Part shown: piece after piece, positions 14,719-57,272 of the stretch
Numbering within the stretch: the stretch's first letter is position 1
Layout of the letters: each line of letters opens with the position of its first letter
NCBI RefSeq assembly: GCF_040938485.1
Contig: NW_027271164.1
Span: 310,001-374,000 of the forward strand
DNA: 64,000 bases
From: Diadema antillarum
Lineage: Eukaryota
Reading direction: 5' to 3'
The notes under the pieces: model-generated
What the model saw: only the letters and a program-made list of their open reading frames with translations
What the model was told of the DNA's origin: nothing
Databases searched by the model: none
Made by a program: the position numbers and the translations under genes

Positions 14719-14865
14719 ATCTTCACTGATGTATGCTTATAGAATATAGAAATATACAATACAAAGGGTTTTCATACGACACTGACTTGACTGAATTCTG
14801 TACACTTAAGTTCGTTTAGTCCGGTCCTGTCATTTTGGTGTTATTTGATTATCATATCTCACCAG

Positions 14866-15029
14866 GCTTTCCAGACTGTGAAGTCGTCTGCCACTTTCTC
14901 GCTGAAGCTGGTGAGCTACTCCAATCTTGCAAATCGGGAACTAGACGGCGACTGCTGTGACACAGTGTGGTTGTGTAGAATTGACAAGTGCGACCCCAGA
15001 TTTAACATCTGCCTTCATCGTCAGGGCAG
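14866..15029 (+). CDS. Gene 1 exon: C2/MNNL domain part 1
   Basis: caccag|GCT...GGCAG|gtaaga; [54 protein letters not shown]. The F.LKL..Y.N...DG.CCD..C..F.ICL pattern matches the N-terminus of DSL ligands. The 5' boundary could instead be 14811, 14820 or 14875. Confidence 0.85.
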
Positions 15030-16009
15030 GTAAGAGTAAACATGGGTACAACAGAAGAGCGTCTTCAAATTCGGTTTCTAAAGTAACACAGTTCCATGAC
15101 TGACTAGCGATGATTCCCGACCAGGGCTTTCTTTGTTTTCATTTCCCACTGAATTCAGTTTAAGAATGTCTTGTCTCAAAGTTTTAGCGCAGGCATTTAG
15201 TGCTATGATTTGCTTATTATGTTATGTATCAGAGAGTATGCATTGTACTGCTGATATTTTCCTGCTTGCAAGCTGTAGTTTCAGTTTAACGACGTGATTG
15301 TCCAGCTGCATAGAATGTGCCTTTCCCATTTATCATTGTTTTGCTTTTGCTTTTCTTGAAGCAAGTATTTCTCCTGCTTTCAACGCATTAGAAACCGGCG
15401 TGCTGGAATAACCTTAAAAACTGCGCAGAAGCAAAGAAGCGTACAGAAAACAACAACTATTTTGTAGAGTCATGATTTGAGCGATCGCCGTTGCCATTGT
15501 CCCTGTTCTTCCAAATTGATTATCAGTAATCATGTACTCCTCAAAAAGTTTGAAGCAGTGCCACCTTGTCTCAGTAATAATGGAGACATGCTTTGGTAAC
15601 CACAGGAAGATTGTTAAAATCTTTGTAAAATTATATCCTGTCCGTTATGATTATATATGGCTTACATGAAGATGAAGTGCTTTAGATTTTGGGGTGTGGT
15701 CAAAATTGAAAAGTTGCAACAATGACCCAAGCTTGGTAAGTCCTCATTTTTCCCTCGTTGATGAGTGAGTTTTCCAATGTCTCTTTAATAATTGTTATGC
15801 ATTCTAACATCGGCGTTGAGGTAGAAACGTGTGCATAAGTAAACAAATAAACATGCATGTATGGGCATTAAAAAACAGGACTTCAGCCATCTAATGTAAC
15901 AGAACCGTCACCACATTAACACACCAAATCCGTAAACAAATTACTGGCAGGGTCTTGATTTGCTTGGATTTTCATTGTTACTGTCACAGGGATAGATATA
16001 GATTATATA

Positions 16010-16057
<48 letters not shown>

Positions 16058-25000: not shown

Positions 25001-26313
25001 ATCTATAAATAAATTTTAGCTTTATTCACTTACCCTCATAGTATCGAAAGTTTTAACGCAAGAGGGAAGCAAGTTTTCTGCGACAAACCTAGTAGGTAGA
25101 GCGGATGGTGGGAGGTAAAGCTGAAGAGAAATGGATCCCAAAACACACACAATAAAAATAATAATCCCACTCATGAGAGTCATATACCGGGTTCACGTTA
25201 CCAGTTCGACACCCGCGAGGCATACAGCCTACGAGTCATACAGCCCACGAGTCGAACAGCCCATGAGCTCGACACTAGACAAAAGGAAAAAAAAATGCCC
25301 ATGAGTCGACACTGGGCCAACAAGGCCCTCAGACAAGTCAGACAATAGGTAAGCCAGGCCCACGAGTTCGACACTAGGCAAAACAAAACAAAACAAAAAA
25401 AAAACTCATGGGACCAACATTTCATCACGGGGCTTAATGTGTCAGATTCGTGGGTCTATTTTTTGCCTGTGTCGGACTCACGGGCCATAATAGCCTCGTG
25501 TCGAGCCCATGGACTGTATGGCTTGTGGGCTGTATGACTTATGGACCTTTTTTTCGATGTCAAACTCGTGGGCTGTATGACTCGTGGGTGTCGGTCTCAT
25601 AGGATGACTCCAATATACCCAAATGATGACTCACATGGAATCTCATTGATGTTTCCGTTGTCTTGCTTTATGTTCAACAGCCAACTCTACACTGTGATCG
25701 AGTTTTACGTGCGAGCTGATGGTGACGTGATTACGTCATCAAAATTAGAGACTGCCATCCACTCACGAACGAGCAAGGAAATAAACGACATAATCCGTCC
25801 TTACAGACTTTTCGCTGAGGCAACACCAGTTGGTGTCAAATCAAGTTATAAGAGGGTAAGTTAATTATGAAATGCTCCTACAAATGACCAAGCGTCGTGA
25901 AGATTGATGAAATATGATATTTCAAAGTTGACACTTTCTGACAACACTGTAAACTTCTTAAGTTTGTGATTTGATTCTACGTAGATGTTCTTTTACTGAC
26001 ACAGTATGAGTAGAATTTTTCTGCATGTACCAAGCAGAAATTCCGCTGTTCCAGAAGAATGTCCTTAAACATTTCAACACAATGTAATGTCAGGCTATGA
26101 CTTTTTACCCATTGTCACATCCTTTTCATCAGAGTTACCAGCCTCTGCAATTATAAAAAAAAACAGCAACCACAACAACTTTCACTGCAAACGCATTTCG
26201 CCAAATTCCTCAAACACGACAGATAGCAACATTAAGGCGTGTCCATAATACTTGGTGCATGATGGCCGATTAAGAAAGAAGCAAAGAAAAAGAAAACAAG
26301 CAAAGATTATGTG

Positions 26314-26357
<44 letters not shown>

Positions 26358-28285
26358 GGGGGTGGGGTAGATAACTACTAGTATGATGCCGAAGAAATAG
26401 CCCCATACTTTTGCAATGACAACCCGTATGGATAGGTTTATGGATGTAACAGGTGAATGTTCACTATGGCGTCGCACTGTATTACTAGCCATGTATGTTA
26501 TTAACTTGGTTTAAATACATGTAGATTCACGTAAGTACGTTCATAGCTGGCTTTCAAGGTAAAGCTCTAATTGCGTGCAAACCTGAACAGACTAGTAGCG
26601 TTAGTGATTTGTGCAAGTAAAACATCCTTTCCTGACAATATTCACAAAATATGAACTTCAAGAATTTGACAAACTTTTTGCTGATCGAAATGTTTATTAT
26701 CATCTCCAGGCAAAAAGTATTGTTGATCGTCGCTGGCAGTAAGATCTTTCATGGTTGAAATACCCCCCTTTATTTCCCCCTAGATATTTCGTGTGGATAT
26801 GCTATGTATATCAGACTCAGGAAAAAAAAGTTAATTCTGTCTGCAAGGTTTCTAAGCTTATATTTGAAGACATATCACGCTAAGTCTGTATCAATACTCT
26901 TTGACAGGAATGGATGACCCACAACTGGTTCGTCTTCGTGGTCATCGCTTTGATCATCCTCATCATCGTAGTCATATTACTGTATGTGTATGTGAAGAGG
27001 TAAGACTATGAGAAAACGGAGTTCGTTTTATTCATCATGTGGTTCCATAGCCCCATGTAGCATATTATCAATATAAAAATATTCATGATTACCTCATGAA
27101 ACCATGTCCTCTCTGGTTATTGCATCATTGTTTTATGTTTCTACCTTGACATAATATTATGAGTGCATTGAAAGTGCTGAAAAACAAAGACTAGACACAG
27201 ATTCCAAACATTTTCAGAAGGTTTTGACACCTTGAAAATGAACGTTCCCTGCTCCTGTGATCTTCATTAAACGTTCTCTGCAGAATCTCCCTGCAAAAGT
27301 TGCAATGAAAGTTGCTTACTCGTACACTGTCGTAACGATCGTGATTCATTGACAAAAGAGACAAATAATATTGTTGGCACCTGGTAAGAATTGCTCCGTT
27401 GTATACTCTGTTCCAAAATCGAAATAATGTTTGAATAGAATTGATTTGAATTGAATTAGATTGAGTTAAACTGATGTGATTTAAATTGAATTAAATTGAA
27501 TCGAATTGAATGTTGAATGGAATTGAATTGATTTTAATTGAATTGAATTGAATTGAATTGAATTGAATTGAATTTAAGAATTGTCATGAAATAAAGGTTG
27601 CAAAGCCACATATGTGTAAGAAAGGGGGGTCAGGGGTCGGCGTACCACTGTAAATTATGACTGCAATGAATTTAAAGTCATTGCATCCCTCTCGCATTGT
27701 TTACCCTGCTATAGCTTACTCATACATTCTATACTATGTTACTTTCTGTTCATGTCTTTTGCGTGATACCCTTTAGCCTATACCTCACTTTTCTGGTATT
27801 TCACAATTACGCTGTAATCATGTTATAACGACTTGTGGTCAAAGTTAAATCTCCTCTTCTCGGTGACACTTTTTTCGTAAAAGGCAGTTTTCTTAAAAGG
27901 CAGACATAGAGTTGCATATGTCTCGGGAAGTCAGAAGTGCAATAAAGACGGAAATATTGTTTCGCCCTTCGCTATGTTATACACTGTAATATATTTTTGT
28001 TCGCAGGATTAAGAATAACTTTGACCGCGTTGAACAAAGTTGCATTTGTTTTTCTAACTTACTTGACGATGCAGGAGAAAACGGAGGGAGGCTTTCGATC
28101 ACGACGAACTCGAGAAAGAAGGTACGCGATTCCTCAATCCCGCCTTTGCGACCACGCCAACTGGCGCCCAACTACGGCTAGAGGACGCTAGCACGCCCAG
28201 CGAAACGACGCCATGGGAGACGAATTTGAGCAATACGAACATGTATTCTTTCAGGGGGCCGCCAGAGACCGAGTCTGAACAATGA
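14866..28285 (+). CDS. Gene 1: Notch-ligand-like (C2/MNNL-DSL-EGF) type I membrane protein with SEA-like juxtamembrane domain; 11 coding exons found, start/signal exon unresolved
   Basis: Manually spliced exons: 14866-15029, 16159-16297, 16889-17046, 17464-17623, 20138-20234, 20962-23428, 23857-24026, 24469-24637, 25681-25855, 26908-26999, 28075-28285. All introns are GT-AG with phases 2,0,2,0,1,2,1,2,0,2. Total 4002 nt in frame (1333 aa + stop). DSL cysteine spacing C-x8-C-x3-C-x11-C-x7-C-x8-C, cbEGF array, [25 protein letters not shown]. No symbol given: it lacks the DOS motif and full Notch-binding face of Delta/Serrate. Confidence 0.9.
16014..16055. repeat. (TA)n microsatellite in a gene 1 intron
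   Basis: Direct reading. Confidence 0.95.
16159..16297 (+). CDS. Gene 1 exon: C2/MNNL part 2
   Basis: cgcag|T...TGGCAG|gtaggc; [46 protein letters not shown]. 139 nt, the same length as the gene 2 counterpart. Confidence 0.88.
16889..17046 (+). CDS. Gene 1 exon: C2/MNNL part 3
   Basis: ctatag|GGT...TCTGC|gtgagt; [52 protein letters not shown]. 158 nt, the same length as the gene 2 counterpart. Confidence 0.88.
17464..17623 (+). CDS. Gene 1 exon: DSL domain
   Basis: cgcag|A...GATGTG|gtaaac; [53 protein letters not shown]. Confidence 0.92.
20138..20234 (+). CDS. Gene 1 exon: first calcium-binding EGF
   Basis: tgtcag|GAA...CAAG|gtaaat; [33 protein letters not shown]. 97 nt, the same length as the gene 2 counterpart. 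Confidence 0.92.
20962..23428 (+). CDS. Gene 1 giant exon: 20 complete cbEGF repeats, one 4-Cys EGF, start of next EGF
   Basis: tttcag|GT...GTTAG|gtaaac; 2467 nt open frame that extends ORF 21168-23432 upstream. The repeats follow D/N-x-D/N-E-C...C-x-D/N. Confidence 0.95.
23857..24026 (+). CDS. Gene 1 exon: end of split EGF plus last EGF
   Basis: gtgtag|A...GTCG|gtgagt; [56 protein letters not shown]. Confidence 0.92.
24469..24637 (+). CDS. Gene 1 exon: juxtamembrane (SEA-like) domain part 1
   Basis: caacag|AC...AGCGG|gtaagc; [57 protein letters not shown]. Phase 1 in and phase 2 out fit the neighbouring exons. It is absent from the ORF track. Confidence 0.8.
25177..25610. mobile_element. 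Foldback-type element built from CCCACGAGTCATACAG/CGACAC units
   Basis: The left half carries units in one orientation and the right half the reverse complement (GGGCTGTATGACTCGTGGG). Termini GAGTCAT...ATGACTC. Confidence 0.65.
25681..25855 (+). CDS. Gene 1 exon: juxtamembrane (SEA-like) domain part 2
   Basis: caacag|C...AAGAGG|gtaagt; [58 protein letters not shown]. Confidence 0.82.
26310..26356. repeat. (GT)n microsatellite
   Basis: Direct reading. Confidence 0.95.
26908..26999 (+). CDS. Gene 1 exon: transmembrane helix
   Basis: tgacag|GAA...AAGAG|gtaaga; [31 protein letters not shown]. Confidence 0.9.
27437..27574. repeat. (GAATT)n pentanucleotide array in the last intron of gene 1
   Basis: Direct reading; degenerate at the 5' end and pure at the 3' end. 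Confidence 0.9.
28075..28285 (+). CDS. Gene 1 terminal exon: short cytoplasmic tail
   Basis: Branch-point-like ttctaac, then gatgcag|G; [69 protein letters not shown], with a polybasic stop-transfer segment. An alternative acceptor at 28006 is possible. Confidence 0.72.
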
Positions 28286-29500: not shown

Positions 29501-29657
29501 NNNNNNNNNNNNNNNNNNNNNNNNNNNNNNNNNNNNNNNNNNNNNNNNNNNNNNNNNNNNNNNNNNNNNNNNNNNNNNNNNNNNNNNNNNNNNNNNNNNN
29601 NNNNNNNNNNNNNNNNNNNNNNNNNNNNNNNNNNNNNNNNNNNNNNNNNNNNNNNNN
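29501..29657. other. Assembly gap (N run)
   Basis: Ns. Confidence 1.
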
Positions 29658-43200: not shown

Positions 43201-44287
43201 CTAGGAGGACAATCAGGGAAGTGAGACACGTCCCTGGTACAATGTATGTCGATTATGACGTCAACTATGGAACCGCGAAAAACAGATGATATTCAATGTA
43301 TCTGCATTCGTAAGGGTAACGTGCAAACTAACATTCCCTGGGTGATATAGATTATTGTATAGCTTGGTAAAGGAAGAAGAAACTTTAACCCAATGCATTT
43401 ATTACAGGTAAATATGGTGGAGATCCCCGGTAGTTCTCTAGAGTTAATTACGATAAGTGTTCATTAGTTTCTTAAACAAATGAACGCGATAAAAGCACGT
43501 GATATGGTGGAATTCCAAATAAGGGCAAGAAACTGCAGTTCGTGAGAGTTTGCTACATGTACTGTTATAGAAGTCTTGACGCGTTGGCAGGTATCCACTT
43601 CTTTTCTTCGCCATTGTGTTCATTCCAGTCGATCGCACTTGAATTGATGCTGACTGGAGCACAGGCATGTACAATCGGTACTAGACAGCCCTCTTTTTAT
43701 GACGTCACTACCAAAGCAGTATTTTTTCCTAGTCTAAGGTTATTTTTATCATTTTTGTTTGTCCCGCGACAAGTCCTACATTTCTTGAGATCATTCATGC
43801 GGTCTTTTATGGTTACCGTAGCTTGGTTGATATTGGAAGTTGCCGGGTCACTATTCATCCTGTGCAACGCCAGAACGCACCGTTTTCATTCAAGAAAGGG
43901 GCGCAAATGCATATCATTCTTATAGTCGTGTACGTTCAGCCATCTTTCATTTCATATATGCCGGCTATAAAATAACAAGACTCTGTTGTAATCTTATAGC
44001 CGGCAAATATGAAATGAAAGATGTTAACCATGGAATCAATAAAAGGTTTTACGATGAAAAGGATTTTGACAGTGATCCTATGCTTGTGTAGTTTAGAGAT
44101 AGGAGAAATACAAACAACACTTGACGTTCATGACAGGAATAGTTGTTGCGTTGGGTCAAAATGATAGCAACACAGACTTGGCATGTTCAAGATGCATCAA
44201 GGGATGAGAAGAAAGGCCCAATTCGAACAGTGACCATTTTCATTAAATAAATTTATGCACCCAAACAACATCAATCAAAGAAACAAA

Positions 44288-44339
<52 letters not shown>

Positions 44340-47300
44340 GCAAAACCATGGCTGTTTTTATCGCTATCGTTTGTTTAATTAACTAATTTGCATATGACCT
44401 GGTAATTGCCACAACAATCTCCATTCCTTTTAAACACATAAAAGTTGAACTTTCATCCTTGCCCAGGTTTGGCAAAACCCCCTGCTATTCCTGCTCTATT
44501 GGTCATTTCTTTCTTTTCTTTTCTTCTTTTTTTCTTGCTGGTTAATTTATTCATTATCAATCTGACGTGTTTAATTCTTAAATTTCTGTCCGTGTTATCA
44601 TTACGAAATCATACTGAACAGAGTAATATCCAAATATTGGAGTAGTTTCCATAAAGAGGACATCCCAAAGATCTCGTGCTTGTGCCATAATCATCGTTTT
44701 AACGTTTCAATTGCAACAATCGGTATCAGTCTTAACTCACTGGTTTAGTTTCTACTCTGTAAGACAAATTTGCTCTTGAGTAAGTTCACTATAATCTGGT
44801 AAAACCGAATTATACAACTGATCGATTCTTAGCCACAGGTTGTCTTAATGATAATCAAACAAAATATGCTTCTTTTTAAAAAAATTAAATTAGAACTTAG
44901 ATTCTCAAAAGTTTTGCTTCTATGTCTATAATACAAGGATCTTGGAAGAAAATTATGTTATGGTCGTTACATACTCCTTGAACGTATCCAACACCCACAT
45001 GACTGGAAGGAAAAATAACCCCCAACTTGTACTTCTTTGTTTAGTAAATATCGAGATACATATCTCATGCGGGTCATGTAATATATTTTGAGTTTTCTCT
45101 CCACACAATCATGTCGCTTTTCTCGGGACGTTATCAGCAACAACAGTCATACTATACTATGCACAATTCAGTGTATGTTTTGGCACATCTTACTCTAATT
45201 TCAAACATTTTTCAATACCCAGAGCGTACTAGCCTTTTTACAAAAAACTCCCATGGTGTTTTTTTTTTTCCACTGACAGTCGTGAGTAAAGAGCTGGTAA
45301 AGAGTTGAAGCCAAGAGTGTTCGCTGGTCTTGGCTCTTAACTGTCGCTGGTGGTTTGAATAGACCGATCCTCTCTTTGCTTGTTCAACTTGCAATCATGA
45401 CATCGAAGGGGCCTTTGACAAGGCTAGTAACACACTTGAAAAGTACAGGCAAGGGTAAAGTTTTGCTTAGAAATATAATCAAACATACCAAACACATTGC
45501 GAGATATATTTTGTTGAATATAAGTCCAGTGGGCAGAAGTGAAGGGATTATAATAAGTTTCATGTCTTCTGCTCAAATGAGATGAAAAAAGAAAACAACA
45601 ACAAATGAAACGCAGTTGATGCATCTGTTAATAAACGCAACTGCGTAGTGGTTGAGTCATGCAGAGCAAATACTTCGACTATACAACTTCACAATGAGTG
45701 TACTGTATAATCCTTATACTTGGACATTGTTTTAATGAGGTAATGTGTTTTCATGAACTTTGTGATTGCTGGGGCTCAAGTAAGCTGACCACAAAACTTA
45801 TCGATTGATGAAAATAGTCAATGCAAAGTCAGATAGAAGGATATGTGACGCTTTCAGTGTTGCTGAAGAGTATGGTTAAGTATTAGGGAATATTTCTGGA
45901 AACGAACCGTGGTGAGTCATTTCTTACACTTCCTCAAGCAATAACCAAGAGGTTACCAAAACTCTTTTCAATGCTCTAAATCCGGGACAGAGGTGACAAA
46001 AGGTCTGAACTCTGTGCCATCAAGTTCCCGCATTATCCTTCCTTCTGCCAGATCCCGCTATTCTACGCCCCCCCCCCCATGGTTACATTTCGAATGGTTA
46101 CATTCGTATGTCAGAGCATTATGGTAGTATGGGACATCATACTATTAAAACGAAAAAACAAACAAACTAGCAAGCAACAGGTGCATGTGTGTTCAAAAAT
46201 ATCATTATATTTGTATGCATCGTAGGTGCGTAATGGATTGGTGTGGTGACGTATTAAATGAATGAACGAATAAATTGATGAATTAATACGACCAAATAAT
46301 AATCTAACATAAATAAACACATTCCATCATTCTTTCTGTCACCTCCGTTATCAAGTGAGTCAATATCGGTTTTTAGTGACCGTTGAAACATCGACGTCAT
46401 AATTATCTTTCATGACATCATTGAATCGATATTGTTTCATCTCTTGTCGTCTCTTGGTTGACAGGCACTGGGAAGGGTTGAGATATCCTACAAGCTCAAA
46501 CACTACGAGAACCTGGGCCACATCGAGCTGGACGGGGGTTGCTGCGATCTCTTCTGCGGCAGCTGCGACAACCGGTTCAATCTCTGCTTCGACCAGTACC
46601 GTGGGTGAGCAAGTCCAAGCGCGCCATCTCGCGGTGATATTACCCTGGTGCCCGGGGGCTTTCCTAACTTGAATCTTGTTTCAACATGTACACAGTGGTA
46701 TGATTTCAGTGGTTTGATTTTAGAGCTTTCCAAGGTACCAAGTGCGGATGCGGCGCCTTGCCGAAATGCATATAAATGTATATGTATTAAAAATTGTAGA
46801 AAATCACTCTCGAATAGCATGATGACATGGCAATAATGTAAAAACATGTGCCCCGGGTTGGTTGTGGGATGCTTTAGCTCTCTACACAACGCATATATGG
46901 GCTGTCTGAAAAAAAAAAAAAAAAAACAACCAGCAAGTTTCACCATAAATCTTGTTTTTAAAATGTTTACACCCCTTGTCCTTCATTTACTAACACCGAG
47001 AGCATGGACATACTTATACACGTACACACAGTAGGCCTACACACTTATACCGTTCCCACTCATTTCCGAAGCACACCCGTACAGATATTTTACGTGATAT
47101 GTATACGTGCACATTAAAAAAATTAGGCACTACAAGCCATCACCTCCATCCCCACCATGTTTTCGATTTTTGTTTCTCTCGTAAGATCCATGTAGCATTT
47201 CATATCTTTCATGTTATTGCAATGTTATACAGCAACAATGACGTCGCAGACTGCGACTATGGAAACTATGAGACGGATCGCTTGTACGAGAACAACGATA

Positions 47301-50300
47301 ATTTCAACTTCCCGACTTCCTTGTCATCTTCCGTCTCGAACCCGATCGTTTTTACCATCAATTCGTTTTCGGTAAGTCTGTCAACTGTAAAACCAGACAT
47401 GTTTGTGTGCATAAAACTTTCGCGAATTTCGTGAGGAGACAAGATCCGCGAGAGAAAATTACGTGATTAAGATCCTTAGTAATAAAGCTTTTGTCCATGC
47501 ACAATTTACAGAATTCCAGTCGCCGATTCGCGAAAGTTTCATGCCGCGAAAAAGGCCGTCGGCTGGTTTTACCATATGTCACGGAGTAACCGCCAACCTT
47601 TCTTCATGCTTTGAACGCTCTGGTTAATGGATTATCGTTGGATAAAGTACCTGCTTTGATATCTGAGGTCGTTTTTAATGACGTCAGCGTTAACATTGCA
47701 ATAAAAAAAAAGTCCGAGTCGAGCCCTCTAAACTAACTTGGTATAGACCCTATCATTATTATGGTTTAATGTTTGTTTGTTTGTTGGTTGTTTGACTAAT
47801 ATATCACGATTTTGATGAGTTTAGTAAAACGTCAAAGATATTTGTGGTTTAAACTTTTTCTGTCTCTTGATGATTTCCATAACATGAAAATGCTGTGTAT
47901 AAACTGTATAGTGACTGATAGGTTTTATGGCTCAGAAGAGTTGTCATGTCGACAATGTGCAAGAAGACAATTAGAATCTACTGTAGAATTCTGGAAAATT
48001 TGTGATGACGAAACGATAATTCCATTGCAAAAAAAAAAAAAAAAATCTCGCATTGAACATGTAGAATGATAGACACATAGACCAGATGACTAGACAAAGG
48101 CCTTTTTATGAATTTGTGTTTTTCTAAGCCCTTTTTTGTTGCTTTATGTTGCTGCAATTGAGTTTAATGTTTTCCTTCTTGTGAGATTTGTCGAAACGCA
48201 ACCCTCACAAATATACTTTATATTATTTACCCATTTTTTTTTTTAATAATTGAAAGTTTTTGAGAAAATGAACAAAACACTGATGATATGTATAGTAAAC
48301 CACCAACGTCAAATGATATCACCAACCCCAAACAGAACGGTTTCCGATCAAAAATCGAAGTATGGGACTATGACCCGGGCAACAGCGATGATAAGATCGA
48401 TTACTTCGGCTACAACTACAGAATATCACCGGACAGGACAGCCGCCCTCGCCTCAGCCCATGCGGTGACACTCACTGGTGCCGGAGAGGCTACGTAAGTA
48501 TTCCTTCCCCCACCTCCCTCCCTCCCCCCTCGACTCGCTCTGTCTGTCTGTCTTATTGTCTATCCATCTGTACATCTATCTGTAATATATAATAGTCCAT
48601 ACCAAATTTTGACTGTGTCGATTGCCAGCATTATAGATCAATCACTGTTTCGGGGGGGGGGGGGGGGGGGCGTAAACAGCCAGCCTGTATACTTCAGTTT
48701 CAACAAGACTATAATTATTTTTCTACGCTTTGTGTGAAGGAAACAGGGAAGAAGCAATGAAAGGGAGAGGCACTGAGATCGGAACCTACTATATCATTTC
48801 CTTTCACAGGACAAATGCTTAGAGGACCCTGTATATACCATGACGACACCAACAACGTTATTAACACTGCTACCAGTCCACTACTTTTGTCATTGCTACA
48901 ACAACTACAATCGCAGTCGCCATCAAAATAATTCCCCCCGTATGACTTGAATTTTAGATGTTTTATTTTTTCGCATTAGCTTACTATACACTTCGTGTAT
49001 GTTTATGTAAAAAAAAAAAGCAGCGAGAATTGTTCGTCCCTTCCCTTACACCACACTTGCTGGGGAAAATGCTATACTTCCACCTTCACAATGACCACTT
49101 ACGTTCCAATGACACAATTGTTCAGTACAAAATATACTACTTATAGAAATATGGACCGACATATACATACATGGACTATTAACGGAGGTCTTTTTTTGAT
49201 CCCATCATCACCGCCGCCACCTGATTATGTACATGTTAATAAGTTCATTCAGAAGTTTGGACAATGACGATTGTGTAATCGTGCGTCGTCACTGACAAAA
49301 GAATCGTTTCTCTCATTTTGGTCTTATTTCACTGAGGGGCTTTTTCAGACTCAACTGCCTTTGAATAAACATCAATGATGGGGAGCAGCAAACCTAAATA
49401 CATGACAAATTTTGTGTCACAAATAGATTGATAATTACTGAAGTGGACACTGTCTTGTGGACACGCATGTAACGTTGCTTAATGGTAAAACATAACATGT
49501 CGTCTGCCGTTACTGTCCATGTTTACTCTGAAAAAATGTGCGAAAATTGGGGAAAATAGATTACAAACCACAATCAATCTGCCAAAATATTTGCTTTCTC
49601 TTGTAAAGTACGTGGATTTCGAAAACGAAACTTCTTGAGAGATGATTTACCAATACACACTACAACTGCACATGCATTTTTTTTCATGATTTACAAGAGT
49701 TATTATCTTCTGCGTATGTGGTTCTTAGATTTCTCAAAGCGCCGTCTTGATTTTATCCAGACTGACTGTCGGCGGTGATGGTAAGATCAATGCAGGATCA
49801 TTTTTGACAAAAATAGATGCATGAATTAAATAACGAATGATGAATGTCCATGTGCAGTAGGTACATGCTAGAAACAAACGCATACTGCAGTATTTCCGTT
49901 AGAACGTTAGAACATCAATCTATACACTTTCTTAAGTCTTCTGATTATTCTGCAACAACCTCAAAGGAATATCTGCCCAGTAGGCCCTATAAATAAAAAC
50001 AAACTGTCATTTGGTTTTCTTTGTACTGGACATGTTGAGAATTATTGTGTCATTCGCTTGTAAATTGCAGAATGACTGTGGAGGTGAAAGTGTACTGCGC
50101 CCAACATTATTACGGAACCTCGTCAGGGTGTGACGTGTACTGCGTTGCCAGGGACGACGTTGTTGGGCATTATGACTGCAATGACGTCACAGGGGCCAAA
50201 ATGTGCCACGATGGTTGGACAGGGACAGACTGCAATGTGGTAAGTTTTACGCTGTGACATTTATCCGGCATTACAACCTTCACGATATCGTCAGTCGATA

Positions 50301-53300
50301 ATATCGAAATGAAAATCATATCGTCTTCTTCATACATTTTGTACAAAATTAATACTGGGTTAATTTTTCCTGTAGGTTCTATACTACCCTGAGATTTAGA
50401 CTTCATTAAAATTGTGCTTATCATGCTGTAATCGACAATTATTGCCACAAATTCATGGTGTTAGTGTCGACATGAGACCAAACAATACATTGTATTTGCA
50501 ATCCGTTCATCCATGAGGTAATGTCGCGTATAATTGTCGAGTTCTTGTGCTCATTATTGTAGGAGTATAGTGTGTATAACATGCATGACTAGCCAATCAT
50601 CAGATTGATTGGGCAGAACAAATACTTGGAGGTTACTCCTGAATTCAGTCGTTCATTTTGCATCTACTGTTAATTTGGTTCACACCAGTCGATAAAGTTG
50701 ACGTGGTAACGCCTGTATGCGCAATGGTTAACTCCATAAAGCTTTGAAGCTATTTTGACCCCTTCCACGCGGGGTGGGGGGGGGGGGGGGGGACAGCACG
50801 GTAAATTTTACTATTTGATACGGTTGAAAATTCTCGAGGTCCACACATGGGGGCGTTTTTCGTTACAATAAAAAGGAATATATGATTCCTATGATGTATT
50901 GTCTGGGATTGTTTGCAGATAGATAATCATAAACAATGATACTACCGGTAAAACTCGTGAGAAAGATTCAAAATGACACTAAATAAAATCTTCGGAAAGT
51001 ACTGTATTTTTAATTATTTCTGTTACGTCTATTGCTTGATGCCTTTGTCACATGAAAAAATAAAGGAAATAATAAGACCATTTCAGCATCATTCACAACA
51101 GTAATTACTTCCTTATTCTTGTTCTCAGCAAATTACAGCCGAGAAAACCCAATTTCATCCACTTTTTTCAACTGAAATTTGAACAGAAAAACATGCAAAA
51201 TCTGATTGTCAGTTGGTTGTCAGTTTATGGTTGTCATGGCAACCAGCAATATCGGACATAGCTATATTATATATAATAATGTTTGCAATAAAATTCTACG
51301 AAAAGTTACCAAATTTGGTTGAAATAACAGTTAAAGGGCGTGGGAGTGGCAATTGGAAATAATGGTGGGGCACAATGTGCCCCTTTGAGCTTTATAGAGT
51401 CAGTACAATGCATGCATGAGATACCTTACACAAGGCCCCAACACAGGGTAACAGGTCTTCACCCGCTGAAAACACACAAACAAACGAACACGCACGCACG
51501 CGCGCACACACATAAATCATACACACACAAAGACACACACGCACACGCACACACACATACGCACGCAGAGGCACGCACGCACGTGTAAGCCTTCGATTTA
51601 CCTTTTTAATGTGATTGTATGCAGGAAATCAATGAGTGCGATTCGAACCCATGCTTGAACGGTGGGAGCTGCAACGACCTCTTGGCTGACTATTCATGCA
51701 ACTGTCCGGCGGGAACACAAGGTAAGATTGTGTCGATGCGATACGAAACGAATATGCTCGACATTGATTTTTGCTTATATGTATGAGGTATTATAGACTG
51801 CACAAAATGTTGGTATGATCATGAGTTCTCTATGCCTCTATGACGATGACTGGAATGAGAGGAAAATGATCTTGGATTAGGATGGTGTCAATGCAAATCA
51901 TCTTACCTTTCGAAAACTCTGAAACGCTATCACATTCCCAAAAGAACACTGTCATGACAATATTTGGATAATCGGAAAAACCACAACAGTCTAGGTACTT
52001 TTAAGGACCTGCCTTTAACTACAATGAATTGCACTTAATGTTTATTTTGGCCCTCAGCAGGGGAGGTATGTTGAACACAGTGATTAGAATTCCTGCTTGT
52101 TATGATTGATTTACAGGAAAAAACTGTCTGAACATCGATGAATGTGCTTCTTCGCCATGTGAACACGGTGGTACGTGCCAAGATTTCATAAACTACTTCA
52201 CTTGCGTTTGCGCTCAAGACTACAGCGGCGTAACCTGTCAGTTTGAGATCGATTACTGCGATCCGAATCCTTGCCTCAATGGAGCAACTTGTCTCGGACT
52301 GGACGACGATCGCGTAATCGAGTGTCAATGTGCACCCGGATACACTGGGGGAAATTGCTCTCTCGACATTGACGAATGTGCCAGTGACCCTTGTTTGAAT
52401 AATGGAACATGTGTCGACCAGGTAAATGGCTACAACTGTTCTTGTCCCGCTGGGTTTATTGGGACACATTGCGAATCAGATGTCCGCAATGAGTGCGAAT
52501 CGAATCCTTGTCAAAACAACGCGTCATGCGTTGACCAAGTAGGTGGATACGTGTGTGTCTGTATGGCTGGCTTCGCTGACGACCATTGCAATGAAGATAT
52601 AGATGAGTGCTCTCCGAATCCTTGCGTGTTCGGCAATTGTTCGGATAAAGTCAATAAGTACATTTGCGAGTGCGACCCGGGATACGCTGGTGTCAACTGT
52701 ACAGAGAACGTTGACGATTGTGATCCGAATCAATGTCAGCACAACTCATCTTGCGTCGATGGAATCAATAATTTCACCTGCTCTTGCTCTCCGGGCTTCT
52801 TTGGACGTTTCTGCGAGATCGACATCGACGAGTGTGCCAGCGCGCCATGCCAACACGGTGGACGGTGCGAAACCCCAGCAGTGAACGACTTCAGGTGCCA
52901 TTGCTCTGGGACGGGTTATACCGGGCTGCTGTGCCAAGAGGATGTGAACGAATGCGACTTTGACTTTGCATGTCCACCGGAGACTACCTGTGTCAACACG
53001 AATGGAAGCTATTCGTGCTCTCAGCCAGAGGGAACCACACCTTTGCCAGGACTGTGCCGCTCCAATATCTGCTACAATGGAGGCACCTGCATGATCGTCA
53101 ATGACACATATCAGTTAGTATTGATTTTCACTTTTATTTTATCCTGATGATGCTTAAATCAGAAAGAAGATAATTATACAAACTTACCCTTTATTCATGG
53201 CCATGAAGCCTTTTCTTTGCTTGACATAATCATTATTAGAAGATGATGCCAAGCAGGGTGAGAATGTCCTACACAGTCAAATTGACTAGGTGTAACAGGG

Positions 53301-56300
53301 AATATTTAAGACGGAATTTAAACGAGAGTCCGTTATGGGCGGTTTAATTGTTCTGGTTTGGCTGTTACGGTTCCAAAGGATGGGGGTAATGACTGAAAAA
53401 CGCGATTGCCCTACACTTTGTATCAGGTCGTTGTGCGATGTCCAGGAAAACGTTGACCAGTGACACAGGCAGAGGTACGCCTAAGATTTTTATGAATTTG
53501 GATCGCAAGGATTCAGGATTATGTCAGTATCGTTGTGCTAGGTTGTGCATGATTCTGGAGAGGAGAATATGAATTTTGAGTACGATAAGTTGTTAAATAT
53601 AGGAAGCCCGTGGAGGGATTTGAGAAGGGGTAGTCACATTCTCTTTTGTATGGGTTGAAAAGGGGAGCAGTTTCATTTCGTCGCAAAGGGGAAGATGTTT
53701 AGTATACAGGAGTCAAGATTGGGGAACTTTTTTTCTCCGTCTATCTGTTGTTTGTGAACAAAAATCTATATTCGACTTTCTGTCAACTATGATTCACAGG
53801 TGCTTGTGTAACAACGACTTTAAAGGGGAACTGTGTCAGACACCGACTGAGCCATGTTCTCCCAACCCCTGCCAGAATGGAGGGCTCTGTGAAGTACTGG
53901 TGGCTGGCAACGGTACAGTAAGCTATGAGTGCACATGTCTGACTGGTTACTTCGGAGTCAACTGCACACAGAGTAAGTAGACTCAACCATTAGCTCTCTA
54001 TTACTTATCACACTCACCAAGCTTGCAGACGGAGGCGACCTATACTAAAACATCCATGCCCATTTATGACAGCAGAGAGTGAAGGAAAAATGTTTCCATT
54101 ATTAATTGTACGACAATGGCATGTCTAGAGGTCTTTGTAAGTGGACTGTTGTGATCCTCAGTATTGCAAAAAATGGTTTCTTTAATATGTAATAATTACC
54201 GAGCATTGATCATAGAGGGGTATACATCCCGTACTCTCCCTCTCACCCCTCCCACTTCAGACCTATCCCAGAAAGCATCTCTAATCCAACAGCGCTTGTG
54301 AGAAAAAAACAACAACTGAAAACAAGAGAACAAAACAGAGACATCCCTAAAAACAGTAAGGTTGAAAATAAAAGGTGCGAGAAAAAAAAAATTATCATTT
54401 GATAGATATGAATTCTGCCAACAAAGAAAGTGAATACTCGAGTACAATTTTAGAGGTGTGAGCTGAAAATTAAGTGAGAGATGATTCCTACTAATGTAGA
54501 AACGCATCCTTTGTGAAATGATTACCTGTTTGTGTTGTCGATTGAAAATTTTTGTGTACAGATAGTATGCAATTCAAATTAGTTCGTATAATCCGTCATG
54601 TCTCCAATATTGTTTAAAACTTTTGGTAAGACACACATACACGCACAGACACACACAGACACACATACACACACTACAAAGACAAGCAAACGAACAAACA
54701 GATCAAAGTATTAATGAATGGGAATACAGTCCGCAATATCAAACCGTAATTATTTCTCTCCAAATGAATATATCTTTCTCATTTTTGTTCGACAGGTGCT
54801 GTCGTATCTCCGGGACCGCAGTCGGTAAGTTGATTTTGCAATTCTGTCTTATCATAGCTCGGTGCTTTTATTATTATCATTATTATTGTTATTCAATAAA
54901 ACGTTTTTTATCGAATTATTATTTTTGAAACGCTTTCATAGCATGTGTAAATAGATGATCGTAATATTCACTTTTATTTCGCTTTATTCCAGTCGGCACC
55001 CATATGGATCAGTGCTCCCATTTTGCTACTGATCATCGTTATCATCCTCGTGTTGGCATTGTTCATCTACATAGTGAGAAGGTAAGCTCTTCTGCATGCT
55101 TATTTTTTTCTGTTCGTTTTATGCCTTCGCAAATTATACGAATTTGATATGCATTAAACGCTGTGCCATGAAAGCTGATATTTTCAAAACAATATAATGC
55201 CAGGTTGCCCATTTACGTTTCTTCCAAGATTCTCAAGCATGGATATCATGCAATTACGGAACGGTTCAGAAAATAATTATACATTACGGAAAACCGAAAA
55301 AAAAAAAAGAGACATGGCTTATCCTGACGTCCGACAGTTGCTATCCCCACAAAGCTAAGCCTTTTAGAAAATTATGTTGTTGTTGTTGTTGTTTTTTCAG
55401 GAACAGGAAGAAAGATCGGTTGGTAAACTCGCCTGTAGTGCTAGCTAACCCTCATGCCGATACGGTGGTCCTTCCCGGAATGAGCTCTCCCGAGGCCCCG
55501 CCCTTGCCCCCTAAGGGAAAACTCGGCCAACCCGATGGGTCTGTGGTCTTTACCAACAATCTGTACAGTGATATGGACATTGAATCGCGTGGGGCTTGTG
55601 CCCTTCCACCGTTACCTCCTCCGTACACAGTATCTGAAAATAGTGACTACCATGGCATTGAAAATCCCTATGCAGAGGGAAACTACATGGGAACTGATCC
55701 ACTTAAGGCTAGCAGTGGGTCAACAAAAGAACCGCGAAGTCAAGCAGTTGAGAACGATTACGAAATGGCGCCCGACCTCTTTCACTCTGAGCAAGGCCCT
55801 AGGGTGCAGAATGAGTACACGATGGACCCAGCGGCCGCTCCTGTTCATGCTCCAGATGGACCCTACTCAACAAAGATCTTCCCCGGAAAGGATGACTCAG
55901 AACAGAGGGCACAACCCAATGTGAGACCACTGTCCATCTCTCTTGATCCTCCAGCTACCAACCCAGAAAATGATTACGTTCTTCCTTCTTCCCCTGCCAA
56001 ATCCCAATCCCCTTCTACCCCTGCTAGCCCTTACTCAACTGCCATCTATGCTCAAAAGGCTGACGAACCGTCACCATATTCTGGTTCTGCGGACCCGTAC
56101 TCCACCAAAATATTCCAAGGCAGTGACGCATCTCAACCGACCACTCCGGTGAGCCCCCAGTCACCAACGTCTCCCAACAGTGATCATACCTCAACCATCT
56201 CTACTCCCAATAATGACTATGCTTACCCAACAGCATTCGATGCCAAGCCAGATGAGGTCTCCACCCCTCCAGCAAATCACTACGCACAGCCTACCATACC

Positions 56301-56430
56301 ACCTGTACCACACTCACCAAAGGCTGATGGTCCCAGTGAGAACGTGTACTCCAATACCTCTCGTCCTGGAAGCTATTCCAAACTCCCGTCTGTCCCCGAT
56401 GCCTCTCTCGATACGGCTGATGACAACTAG
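35929..56430 (+). CDS. Gene 2: Notch-ligand-like (C2/MNNL-DSL-EGF) type I membrane protein with a long Tyr/Pro-rich cytoplasmic tail; complete 11-exon model, 1022 aa
   Basis: Exons: 35929-35976, 46465-46604, 47233-47371, 48336-48493, 50071-50239, 51625-51721, 52117-53113, 53800-53972, 54796-54824, 54993-55081, 55401-56430. All introns are GT-AG with phases 0,2,0,2,0,1,2,1,0,2. Total 3069 nt in frame from ATG to TAG. Paralogous to gene 1. Confidence 0.92.
39428..40042. mobile_element. Non-autonomous DNA transposon (Kolobok-like foldback MITE) with TTAA TSD
   Basis: TTAA|AGGACAAGTTCACCTTCATAAACATAAGGATTGAG ... CTCAATCCTTATGTTTATGAAGGTGAACTTGTCCT|TTAA. The arms are complementary over about 200 nt. 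TTAA TSD plus AGG termini fit Kolobok. Confidence 0.85.
40235..40271. repeat. (GTCT)n microsatellite
   Basis: Direct reading. Confidence 0.9.
41802..42331. mobile_element. MITE with CACTG-type TIRs and arrayed subterminal GGTGTTAA/TTAACACC motifs (CACTA/EnSpm-like)
   Basis: Left CACTGCAAAAAGTCCGGTGTTAAAT versus reverse complement of right TACTGTAAAAACATCGGTGTTAGAT. More than 10 internal copies of the motif in both orientations. No clean TSD. Confidence 0.7.
44289..44335. repeat. (CA)n microsatellite
   Basis: Direct reading. Confidence 0.95.
46465..46604 (+). CDS. Gene 2 exon: C2/MNNL part 1
   Basis: tgacag|GCA...CGTGG|gtgagc; [47 protein letters not shown]. This frame is absent from the ORF track. 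Confidence 0.88.
47233..47371 (+). CDS. Gene 2 exon: C2/MNNL part 2
   Basis: atacag|C...TTTTCG|gtaagt; [46 protein letters not shown]. Confidence 0.9.
48336..48493 (+). CDS. Gene 2 exon: C2/MNNL part 3
   Basis: aaacag|AAC...GCTAC|gtaagt; [53 protein letters not shown]. Confidence 0.9.
50071..50239 (+). CDS. Gene 2 exon: DSL domain
   Basis: ttgcag|A...AATGTG|gtaagt; [56 protein letters not shown]. Confidence 0.92.
51625..51721 (+). CDS. Gene 2 exon: first cbEGF
   Basis: atgcag|GAA...CAAG|gtaaga; [33 protein letters not shown]. Confidence 0.92.
52117..53113 (+). CDS. Gene 2 large exon: 7 complete EGFs, one 4-Cys EGF, start of next EGF
   Basis: ttacag|GA...TATCA|gttagt; 997 nt open frame that extends ORF 52395-53147 upstream. 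Confidence 0.93.
53800..53972 (+). CDS. Gene 2 exon: end of split EGF plus last EGF
   Basis: tcacag|G...CAGA|gtaagt; [57 protein letters not shown]. Confidence 0.92.
54796..54824 (+). CDS. Gene 2 29-nt micro-exon: juxtamembrane stalk
   Basis: cgacag|GT...CAGTCG|gtaagt; [10 protein letters not shown]. It converts phase 1 to phase 0, as needed to join the TM exon. Confidence 0.8.
54993..55081 (+). CDS. Gene 2 exon: transmembrane helix
   Basis: ttccag|TCG...AGAAG|gtaagc; [30 protein letters not shown]. Confidence 0.9.
55401..56430 (+). CDS. Gene 2 terminal exon: 343-aa Tyr/Pro/Ser-rich cytoplasmic tail
   Basis: tttcag|GAACAGGAAG; NRKKDR followed by ORF 55420-56430. GC-elevated, coding-like sequence. 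Confidence 0.9.
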
Positions 56431-57272
56431 TCCAGCTCGGTTTAAGATGGGCACAAGGTCTGCTCATCTACGTACTCAACAATTGAATTCTTTGATTTGA
56501 GATGGTATAACGACCATTGTTCGTCGCTGGCGACGAAAGAATTTATAAATGCGATGAAAAAAAAAAATCTTTCGTGACCCAACATAAATGAGTGACGTAT
56601 ATTTTAGCTGCATTACTATCAAACAATAGTAATAATGCTGCATGCTAATTGTGATGATGGTAGATACTTATTAATGTTATTATTATATTTCAATAGTGTG
56701 TTTTACGATGTATTTTCAGAGTAACATTGGCATCGTGTGTAGAATGACACTCATTATTCGTTCACGGCTTTTCCCATTAATTATTCGGTGATCTCTCTGT
56801 ACAGTACTTTCATGTTGGAATCCTTATTGTCTGCAGCTAGTGCAAGTATTTCGGTGAGAGATTTTCAAGTTTCTATCTTTCTTTTTCTTGGCCAGTTTCC
56901 TTATTTGTAAGAATGTTTGTATAAGTTCGATTATGCTTAAATACTTTGGAATAACAGGCGACTTGCGTTCGGACAGGGAGTTGTGCGAGGGAGAGAGATC
57001 AAAAGTACACAGACTCCATCCTCAGTCCATACGTCTGCCACATAAATATATATATTTTTATTCAATACACAATACACATACTCATGTAATAGAGAGAGAG
57101 AGAGAGAGAGAGGGAGGGAGAGATGGAGTTTGTTGAATATACATGTAGTATATTAAAGTATGTAAGTATAGCTTTTAAAGTGCGCGAGGAAAGCGTATAA
57201 CGATGGTCTCATAGAACTGACATTTTTTGACATTGTTATTTTCCATACCGTCGCTGCGCGTTGTTGCGTATA

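What the first reader, a model, noticed from the sequence alone, without database searches (positions are those of the whole stretch)
55401..56430. A DSL-family protein with an 18-tyrosine scaffold tail
Seen: 343 aa, Pro/Ser-rich, 18 Tyr. Motif matches are PPLPPK (class II SH3 ligand), YSDM (YxxM, PI3K p85 type), PPPY at 55615-55626 (WW/Nedd4-Itch type), SDYHGI (ITIM-like SxYxxI), YVLP/YAYP/YAQP (YxxP, Crk/Nck/Abl type), YSNT (YxN, Grb2 type) and YSKL (YxxL). There is no C-terminal PDZ motif (ends ADDN), unlike Dll1/4 ATEV or Jagged1 EYIV. Inference: phosphotyrosine-based reverse signalling or receptor function, as in engulfment or immune receptors. Short motifs can arise by chance, so the density is the argument.
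Basis: partly seen in the sequence, partly recalled or inferred. Interest (0 to 1): 0.8.

Follow-up and report, generated by a model that had tools for sequence, protein, structure and literature searches.

The report
Tyrosine-rich tail of urchin Delta-like ligand

Summary
Window 55401-56430 (+) is an intact 343-codon terminal exon with 18 Tyr, 56 Pro and 45 Ser, and every listed motif is present. It joins in frame to a transmembrane exon (54993-55081) of a DSL/EGF gene.

In 20,000 composition-preserving shuffles, YxxP, YxxM, YxN, YxxL, PPxY and ITIM-like motifs all occur at chance frequency, so motif density is not an argument. The non-random signals are different:
- N-x-Y occurs 8 times against 1.05 expected.
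- P-Y-S-T-x-I-Φ recurs. Two identical PYSTKIF copies differ at 5 synonymous sites and no nonsynonymous site.

The only relatives among 1.8 billion representative proteins are echinoid orthologues named "fibropellin-1-like" (Lytechinus, Strongylocentrotus) and one marine metagenome fragment. Tyr is the best-kept residue type in their tails: 6 of 13 invariant against 17% for other residues (P≈0.02).

Fate of the named motifs:
- PPLPPK is invariant.
- YSDM sits in an invariant FTNN[L/I]Y block containing the Delta-type NN[L/I] Mind bomb motif. Its +3 residue is M or I, so it is not p85-specific.
- PPPY is in two lineages only.
- The ITIM-like Tyr is Asp elsewhere.
- The last five Tyr lie in a lineage-specific extension.

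AlphaFold2 predicts disorder. Most likely this is a disordered docking and endocytic tail. Phosphotyrosine signalling is plausible but untested.

The parts
55401..56430 (+). Terminal coding exon: cytoplasmic tail (1 base of a split Arg codon, 342 codons, TAG stop at 56428-56430)
   Evidence: Open frame. Acceptor ...(TGT)6 TTTTTCAG|G at 55375-55400. Orthologous tails align from the first residue.
54993..55081 (+). Transmembrane exon ([29 protein letters not shown] + AG of a split codon), donor AG|gtaagc
   Evidence: Hydropathy scan and sequence. AG plus G(55401) gives Arg, reading ...IYIVRRNRKKDR... The same continuous join is seen in RefSeq orthologues...FYKVRRDKREKF....
55438..55605 (+). Conserved membrane-proximal block: [LF]ANPH[AT]D, APPLPPK.KL, FTNN[LI]Y.D[IM] (Delta-type NN[L/I] motif plus YxxΦ), RGACAL
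   Evidence: Invariant columns in A1 and the alignment. The NN[L/I] motif definition comes from PMC4447371.
55660..56049 (+). Conserved tyrosine-motif core: ENPYA.G.Y, EN.YE, [QE]N[DE]Y[ST].DP, G.YST.I[FY], YVLP (camarodont YDVP), [SP]YS..IY
   Evidence: Y90, Y120, Y139, Y155 and Y211 are invariant in 5/5 sequences; Y95 and Y216 in 4/5. N-x-Y is enriched in every orthologue.
56050..56427 (+). Lineage-specific distal tail: SPYSG, second PYSTKIF, NNDYAYP, NHYAQP, ENVYSNT, GSYSKL, end ADDN
   Evidence: No aligned Tyr in the orthologues, and the camarodont proteins end earlier. The second PYSTKIF differs from the first by 5 synonymous and 0 nonsynonymous changes.
50075..50242 (+). DSL-domain exon of the same gene
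   Evidence: Pfam PF01414, E=6.9e-14. Aligns to the DSL of Jagged-1, Serrate and DLL1, E about 1e-10 to 1e-8. Colinear with the orthologues.
46417..53973 (+). Rest of the ectodomain exons: N-terminal C2/MNNL-like region (46417-46605, 47231-47380, 48273-48485) and EGF exons (51616-51726, 52116-53120, 53795-53973)
   Evidence: tblastn of P0004/P0005 is colinear at 50-73% identity. Pfam EGF families. The orthologue N-terminus matches the DLL1 structure 4xbm, E=5e-58.

Best explanation
The interval is the last exon of a divergent Delta-type DSL/EGF gene that, in the data searched, is found only in echinoids. It encodes an intrinsically disordered cytoplasmic domain of about 340 residues that works through short linear motifs, not through a fold. 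The tail has three zones. (1) A membrane-proximal block is conserved across urchin lineages. It carries the NN[L/I] motif that Delta ligands use for Mind bomb-dependent ubiquitylation and endocytosis, directly followed by an invariant Tyr in a YxxΦ context, and an invariant PPLPPK proline motif. (2) A core holds conserved tyrosine motifs of two recurring kinds, [E/Q]-N-x-Y and P-Y-S-T-x-I-Φ, plus a YxxP site. These most likely act as docking sites whose occupancy is switched by tyrosine phosphorylation. (3) A fast-evolving distal part gains and loses further copies of the same motif kinds. Shown here: the exon structure, family membership of the ectodomain, predicted disorder, and the conservation and non-random context of the tyrosines. 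Inferred: Mind bomb use of the NN[L/I] block, phosphorylation, and any reverse signalling. The kinase and the reader domains are unknown.
For: The frame is intact and the splice phases match. The DSL and EGF domains and DLL1/Jagged similarity of the ectodomain are established. The gene is colinear with RefSeq orthologues. A whole-library HMMER search found only the orthologue cluster and one metagenome fragment, so the tail is specific to this subfamily. In the five-sequence alignment Tyr is the best-kept residue type: 6/13 invariant vs 42/247 for other residues, Fisher P=0.018; 8/13 vs 73/247 across the three camarodonts, P=0.020. None of the six invariant Tyr is replaced by Phe. N-x-Y is enriched in every orthologue: 8 vs 1.02 expected in the window, 5 vs 0.82 in each camarodont and 4 vs 0.61 in the TARA fragment (shuffle P from below 0.0002 to 0.0014). 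The Y[SAD][TF].I motif is present 2-3 times in each. The two PYSTKIF heptapeptides differ at 5 of 7 codons, all synonymously. AlphaFold2 gives mean pLDDT 46 with no secondary structure. NN[L/I] is a published Delta ICD motif needed for Mib1 interaction (PMC4447371). Notch-ligand tails are generally predicted to be disordered and motif-driven (PMC1965462).
Against: There is no expression, splice-read or phosphorylation evidence; no RNA run was listed. The alignment holds only about three independent lineages, so the conservation statistics are modest (P about 0.02). The acidic residue that precedes NN[L/I] in the published pattern ([E/D]x2-4NN[L/I]) is 6-8 residues away here, and no KNxNKK or IKNTWDK-type N-box is evident. 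[LF]ANPH[AT]D only loosely resembles one and lies on the wrong side of NN. No known reader domain is established for N-x-Y or P-Y-S-T-x-I-Φ. The SH2-type +1 to +3 contexts are at chance frequency. Whether the ectodomain binds Notch is untested, and its DSL differs from Jagged-1 at several positions ([11 protein letters not shown] vs CRPRDDFFGHY).
Confidence: 0.55

Rival explanations
1. The tail is purely an endocytic and trafficking tail. The tyrosines act unphosphorylated, as sorting or adaptor-binding residues (YxxΦ for AP-2, NN[L/I] for Mind bomb, PPPY/PPLP for WW-type ligases). The tail only serves ligand internalisation, as in canonical Delta/Serrate, with no phosphotyrosine signalling.
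For: The most strongly conserved Tyr (Y55) sits in NN[L/I]Y.D[IM], which reads as YxxΦ in all five sequences. Ligand endocytosis is the established job of DSL tails (PMC11887331, PMC12577249). The tail carries 14 Lys, four of them near the membrane.
Against: Only one Tyr fits YxxΦ. The other conserved Tyr lie in [E/Q]N[D/E]Y and PYST.I contexts that match no known sorting signal. Acidic residues at -1 (DY, EY) are typical of tyrosine-kinase substrates (general knowledge). No Lys is invariant across all five sequences.
Confidence: 0.25
2. The motifs are a by-product of composition. This is a fast-evolving Pro/Ser-rich disordered tail in which the tyrosine motifs have no specific function.
For: The distal 125 residues, with 7 of the 18 Tyr, have no conserved counterpart. 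Tail identity is only 41-47%.
Against: Tyr is the best-conserved residue type. N at -2 is about 8-fold enriched in every orthologue. A repeated heptapeptide is kept through 5 synonymous changes. Tyr at 5.2% is high for a disordered segment (general knowledge).
Confidence: 0.12
3. One reading: an engulfment- or immune-receptor-like phosphotyrosine scaffold using p85 (YxxM), Grb2 (YxN), ITIM, Crk/Nck (YxxP) and Nedd4/Itch (PPPY) sites.
For: The strings exist. PPLPPK is invariant. One YxxP site is positionally conserved as YDVP in camarodonts. PPPY is shared with the TARA fragment.
Against: The +3 Met of YSDM is Ile elsewhere. The ITIM-like Tyr is Asp in all other sequences. YSNT, YSKL, YAYP and YAQP are window-only. 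PPPY is absent from three orthologues. Motif counts are at chance level.
Confidence: 0.08

Closest known systems
Delta / Delta-like Notch ligands (DLL1, Drosophila Delta, zebrafish DeltaD)
   Same: Type I membrane protein with an N-terminal C2/MNNL-like region, a DSL domain, an EGF array, one TM helix and a disordered tail. The orthologue N-terminus matches the DLL1 structure 4xbm best (E=5e-58). The tail holds an invariant NN[L/I], the Delta ICD motif implicated in Mind bomb interaction (PMC4447371).
   Different: The tail is about 340 residues long and has no detectable sequence similarity to any other DSL tail; HMMER over 1.8 billion representatives hit only its own orthologues. No KNxNKK or IKNTWDK-type N-box was recognised and there is no PDZ ending. 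It is rich in conserved Tyr motifs. The DSL has a 2-residue insertion and V/A/V/V in place of Jagged-1 R/P/F/F. cbEGF-like repeats follow the DSL directly.
Serrate / Jagged
   Same: DSL plus many EGF repeats. The window's DSL scores about as well against Jagged-1 and Serrate as against DLL1.
   Different: No von Willebrand C / cysteine-rich region was found between the EGFs and the TM. There are about 11 EGFs. The Serrate-type tail pattern [E/D][E/D]x2-3NNx5Nx3-5NP[L/I] (PMC4447371) is not met; NPH lies upstream of NN here.
Ephrin-B-type 'ligand that signals backwards' through conserved cytoplasmic tyrosines
   Same: A membrane-bound ligand with a kinase-less tail whose tyrosines are its best-conserved feature. 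This is an analogy of logic only.
   Different: There is no sequence relation. Ephrin-B tails are short and end in a PDZ motif. This comparison rests on general knowledge and was not tested here.
Robo conserved cytoplasmic motifs (CC0 YAxΦ; CC1 Tyr phosphorylated by Abl)
   Same: Short conserved Tyr motifs in a long disordered receptor tail, with order and number varying between species (PMC8045725). From memory, P-Y-[SA]-T-x-I-Φ, and especially Lytechinus DPYATTIL, resembles the Robo CC1 core.
   Different: The CC1 sequence could not be confirmed from the papers held, so this is a lead and not a test. The hydrophobic pair is offset by one residue, and the ectodomains are unrelated.

Membership tests
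DSL (Delta/Serrate/LAG-2) Notch-ligand family | DSL domain with six Cys and the YYG motif | tested here: met
   Pfam PF01414, E=6.9e-14, 52 bits vs cut-off 24.2. Aligns to the Jagged-1, Serrate and DLL1 DSL, including HYYG and RDD..GHY.
DSL (Delta/Serrate/LAG-2) Notch-ligand family | N-terminal MNNL/C2 region upstream of the DSL | tested here: met
   Exons 46417-48485 are colinear with the orthologue N-termini. Orthologue residues 38-345 align to DLL1 4xbm residues 9-305. The orthologue cluster's precomputed Pfam list includes MNNL for P0006. The 48-aa window piece alone gave no Pfam hit.
DSL (Delta/Serrate/LAG-2) Notch-ligand family | EGF array, single TM helix, cytoplasmic tail | tested here: met
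   EGF families, E=9e-44. TM exon 54993-55081 followed by the basic RRNRKKDR stretch. The tail exon is in frame.
DSL (Delta/Serrate/LAG-2) Notch-ligand family | Binds and activates Notch | not testable with these tools
   Needs binding and signalling assays.
Delta subtype (vs Serrate/Jagged) | No VWC / cysteine-rich domain after the EGFs | tested here: met
   No such Pfam family appears in the exon scans or in the orthologues' precomputed Pfam lists. EGF11 is followed by a short linker and then the TM.
Delta subtype (vs Serrate/Jagged) | Delta ICD motif [E/D]x2-4NN[L/I] (PMC4447371) | tested here: inconclusive
   NN[L/I] is invariant in all 5 sequences, but the nearest upstream acidic residue is 6-8 residues away, not 2-4.
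Delta subtype (vs Serrate/Jagged) | Mind bomb N-box (IKNTWDK / KNxNKK; Φx5Kx2N) and C-box | tested here: not met
   No such string is present in the tail. [LF]ANPH[AT]D is only loosely N-box-like (ΦxNP) and is not followed by the Lys-rich pattern.
Delta subtype (vs Serrate/Jagged) | C-terminal PDZ ligand (as in DLL1/DLL4/JAG1) | tested here: not met
   The window ends ...TADDN; the orthologues end ...SQSIA and ...NPKNP.
Phosphotyrosine scaffold / immunoreceptor-type tails (ITIM, ITAM, YxxM, YxN) | Named motifs present above chance and conserved in orthologues | tested here: not met
   Counts equal the shuffle expectation. The ITIM-like Tyr is Asp elsewhere, and the YxxM +3 residue and the YxN and YxxL sites are not conserved.
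Phosphotyrosine scaffold / immunoreceptor-type tails (ITIM, ITAM, YxxM, YxN) | Tyrosines phosphorylated and bound by SH2/PTB proteins | not testable with these tools
   Needs phosphoproteomics and pull-downs.

The most novel reading that the evidence does not exclude
Echinoids carry a Delta-derived membrane protein that has replaced the usual short ubiquitin-ligase-docking tail with a long array of conserved tyrosine motifs of previously undescribed types ([E/Q]-N-x-Y and P-Y-S-T-x-I-Φ). It would therefore act as a bidirectional signaller, a Notch-ligand-like ectodomain coupled to phosphotyrosine 'reverse' signalling in the presenting cell, analogous in logic to ephrin-B.
Probability: 0.2. Interest if true: 0.65.

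Novelty: new variant of a known kind. Interest (0 to 1): 0.4.

Why it matters
Notch ligands are usually treated as senders whose tails only recruit ubiquitin ligases and the endocytic machinery. A Delta-type protein whose tail is dominated by conserved tyrosine motifs would be a natural test case for ligand-side (reverse) signalling. It would also show how disordered tails are rebuilt after gene duplication. Sea urchins are a classic Delta/Notch developmental model, yet this paralogue is only auto-named "fibropellin-1-like" and I found no paper describing it. The negative result is useful too: in a Pro/Ser/Tyr-rich tail, hits to SH2/WW/SH3 motif patterns are expected by chance, and only context statistics and orthologue conservation separate signal from noise.

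Tried and rejected
- **Word-index search with the tail alone:** blank, but uninformative. The length filter excludes full-length proteins, and the 188-aa TARA fragment fell just under the limit.
- **Profile word search with the tail alignment:** recovered only camarodont fragments. P0007/L002 and P0008/L003-L004 have an in-frame stop and a frame shift, so they are probably degenerate copies. No new lineages.
- **ESM Atlas feature search:** best scores were 0.77-0.81, within the range that shuffled proteins reach. Discarded.
- **RNA evidence:** no run was listed for 54900-56600, so read laying could not be used.
- **Exact look-up of the ATG-started ORF:** not on record.
- **Paralogous tail for the upstream tandem gene:** tblastn, a motif scan and an acceptor/ORF scan over 27-46 kb found nothing. 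That tail may be short, split over small exons, or lie in the assembly gap at 29501-29657, which I did not try to fill.
- **Pfam on the tail:** no family.
- **Literature:** Walton et al. 2006 is not held. The 'PYATT' search returned only author names. The Robo paper held does not print the CC1 sequence, so the Robo CC1 resemblance stays a memory-based lead.
- **Rejected readings:** non-coding or pseudogene exon (frame intact, orthologues conserved); repeat-derived sequence (TRF finds only a (TGT)6 polypyrimidine tract in the intron and a weak 9-bp, 2.6-copy repeat).
Full report
**1. What is at 55401-56430**

- Read from 55402, the + strand gives 342 codons and a TAG stop at 56428-56430. Base 55401 is the last base of a split codon.
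- The composition is 56 Pro, 45 Ser and 18 Tyr, with one Cys and no Trp.
- The protein ends ...TADDN, so it has no PDZ-type C-terminus.
- The exon is preceded by a textbook acceptor, (TGT)6 TTTTTCAG at 55375-55400.

**2. The gene it belongs to**

- A hydropathy scan finds one strong TM segment just upstream, [29 protein letters not shown]. It lies in an exon from 54993 (after ...ttccag) to 55081, which is followed by gtaagc.
- That exon ends with two bases, AG. With G at 55401 they form Arg, so the spliced product reads ...[18 protein letters not shown]..., a TM helix followed by a basic stop-transfer stretch.
- Upstream + strand exons carry:
  - a Pfam DSL domain (50039-50254, E=6.9e-14);
  - EGF arrays (52110-53144, E=9e-44; also 51610-51783 and 53789-53973).
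- The DSL aligns to the DSL of Jagged-1, Serrate and DLL1 at E of about 1e-10 to 1e-8.
- A tandem paralogue lies at about 14.8-27.0 kb. It has MNNL at 14791, DSL at 17414, a 2.5-kb EGF exon at 20907-23429, and a TM exon ending at 27000 with the same split-codon phase.
- I could not find a similar tail for that paralogue in the window.
- The EGF11 exon ends at 53973 (CAG AG|gtaagt) and carries two bases, while the TM exon starts in phase 0.
  - At least one small exon with length ≡ 1 (mod 3) must therefore lie between them.
  - The best-scoring candidate is 54261-54297 (37 nt, [13 protein letters not shown]), but it is unproven.

**3. Relatives**

- The tail has no Pfam family.
- A full HMMER pass over 1.84 billion representative proteins returned two hits only:
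  - P0001, an 898-aa Lytechinus pictus protein named "fibropellin-1-like" (tail 41% identical, E=7e-15);
  - P0002, a 188-aa fragment from a Tara Oceans metagenome contig (47% identical).
- Cluster look-up and a word search added the L. variegatus (P0004) and S. purpuratus (P0005, XP_003728945) orthologues.
- tblastn of these proteins on the window is colinear over all ectodomain exons at 50-73% identity.
- The RefSeq proteins run without a gap across the position of the TM/tail junction...FYKVRR|DKREKF.... This is indirect support for the splice.
- The orthologue N-terminus matches the DLL1 ectodomain structure 4xbm far better (200 bits) than Jagged-1 (70 bits) or DLL4 (52 bits).
- Earlier notes of this scan name the genome as Diadema antillarum. 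I did not check this. It fits the moderate identity to camarodont urchins.
- Gazave et al. 2009 already counted at least three Delta-type DSL genes in S. purpuratus (PMC2770060), so extra urchin Deltas are known. I found no description of this tail.

**4. Is the motif density more than chance?**

| Motif class | Observed | Shuffle mean |
|---|---|---|
| YxxP | 3 | 2.93 |
| Yxx[LIV] | 2 | 2.15 |
| YxN | 1 | 1.05 |
| YxxM | 1 | 0.27 |
| PPxY | 1 | 0.47 |
| ITIM-like | 1 | 0.52 |
| Any SH2-like context | 7 | 6.08 |

With 16% Pro and 5% Tyr, such hits are expected. What is not expected lies on the other side of the tyrosines:

- Asn at -2 (N-x-Y) occurs 8 times against 1.05 expected. No shuffle in 20,000 reached 8.
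- [E/D/N]N.Y occurs 6 times against 0.19 expected.
- PYS occurs 4 times against 0.39 expected (P=0.00025).
- The same two signals are seen independently in each orthologue:
  - N-x-Y is 5 vs 0.82 in each camarodont and 4 vs 0.61 in the Tara fragment.
  - There are two or three copies of [PSA]Y[SAD][TF].I in each.
- The heptapeptide PYSTKIF occurs twice in the window (residues 154 and 232). The two copies differ at five of seven codons, all synonymously. This argues for selection on the peptide and against a recent duplication.

**5. Are the tyrosines conserved?**

- In the five-sequence alignment (A1), 48 of the first 260 window residues are invariant.
- Tyr is the best-kept residue type apart from the single Cys:
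  - 6 of 13 Tyr are invariant against 42 of 247 other residues (Fisher one-sided P=0.018);
  - 8 of 13 against 73 of 247 when only the three camarodonts are required to agree (P=0.020).
- None of the six invariant Tyr is exchanged for Phe.
- The statistics are modest because there are only about three independent lineages.

Fate of each named motif:

| Motif | Conservation |
|---|---|
| PPLPPK | Invariant in all four sequences that cover it. |
| YSDM | Tyr invariant; +3 is Met in the window and Ile in the other four. It ends the block SV.F[TS]NN[LI]Y.D[IM]. |
| PPPY | Only the window and the Tara fragment. |
| SDYHGI | The Tyr is Asp in all other sequences. |
| YVLP | Corresponds to YDVP, present twice in camarodonts. 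|
| YAYP, YAQP, YSNT, YSKL | In the last ~85 residues, which have no counterpart; the camarodont proteins end earlier. |

The conserved tyrosine motifs are ENPYA.G.Y, EN.YE, [QE]N[DE]Y[ST].DP, G.YST.I[FY] and [SP]YS..IY.

**6. Link to known Delta biology**

- Palardy and Chitnis (PMC4447371) report that Delta homologues share the tail motif [E/D]x2-4NN[L/I]. They also report that the NN pair contributes to Mind bomb binding, ubiquitylation and internalisation of zebrafish DeltaD.
- In Drosophila the corresponding VNNI was dispensable (PMC11887331).
- The invariant NN[L/I] here fits the core of that motif, although the acidic residue is 6-8 positions upstream rather than 2-4.
- I could not recognise the main Mind bomb N-box (IKNTWDK / KNxNKK). 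[LF]ANPH[AT]D is only loosely similar.
- The membrane-proximal third therefore looks like a Delta-style endocytic or ligase-docking region.

**7. Structure**

- AlphaFold2 on the alignment gives mean pLDDT 46 and pTM 0.11, with no helix or strand.
- This is consistent with intrinsic disorder, as is generally predicted for Notch-ligand tails (PMC1965462).
- The alignment is shallow, so this is supporting evidence only.

**8. Reading**

- The best-supported account is a disordered, motif-driven tail with three zones:
  - a conserved Delta-like proximal block;
  - a conserved core of tyrosine motifs of two recurring kinds, plus one YxxP;
  - a fast-turnover distal part that adds further copies.
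- Three features favour phospho-regulated docking over a purely aromatic or sorting role: the conserved Tyr, their acidic or Asn-rich upstream contexts, and the absence of Y-to-F exchange. This remains inference.
- No known reader domain for N-x-Y or P-Y-S-T-x-I-Φ was identified.
They are scored in the Rival explanations section.

**9. Verdict**

- This is a real, conserved feature of an uncharacterised echinoid Delta paralogue.
- The general idea of a tyrosine-based tail survives. The density argument and most specific motif assignments do not.
- I rate it a new variant of a known kind, of moderate interest.

Noticed in passing
window 14791-27000 (+): A tandem paralogue of the DSL gene: MNNL exon 14791-15030, DSL exon 17414-17641, and a single 2.5-kb exon (20907-23429) encoding about 21 EGF repeats. 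Its TM exon ends at 27000 with the same AG|gt split-codon phase. No tail exon resembling 55401-56430 was found downstream. An assembly gap lies at 29501-29657.
   Followed up: partly
window 53973-54993: The EGF11 exon donor (53973|gtaagt) carries 2 bases and the TM exon starts in phase 0, so an intermediate exon with length ≡ 1 (mod 3) is required. The best candidate is 54261-54297 (37 nt).
   Followed up: partly
L003:179-581 and L004:179-581 (Logan SRR31798692/SRR31798690); L002:4933-7397; P0006: Camarodont-like copies of the tail carry an in-frame stop and a frame shift (L003/L004). L002 has a duplicated EGF11-like exon plus a partial tail. An L. pictus model (LOC129282693) fuses MNNL-DSL directly to pieces of the tail. 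These are probably degenerate extra copies or mis-assembled models of the same family.
   Followed up: no
L001:2-583 (Tara Oceans metagenome scaffold): An uninterrupted 188-aa open frame homologous to the tail (47% identity) sits on a 586-bp marine metagenome contig. It is presumably echinoderm larval or environmental DNA. It shares PPPY with the window but not with camarodonts.
   Followed up: partly
window 26249-26378, 44246-44382, 51395-51628: Long (TG/CA)n microsatellites in the introns and intergenic DNA of the two DSL genes.
   Followed up: no
window 50075-50242: The DSL domain has a two-residue insertion (YYGTSSGC) and reads [11 protein letters not shown] where Jagged-1 reads CRPRDDFFGHY. 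The first EGFs after the DSL look like calcium-binding EGFs rather than the atypical EGF1-2 of canonical ligands. Notch binding may be altered.
   Followed up: no
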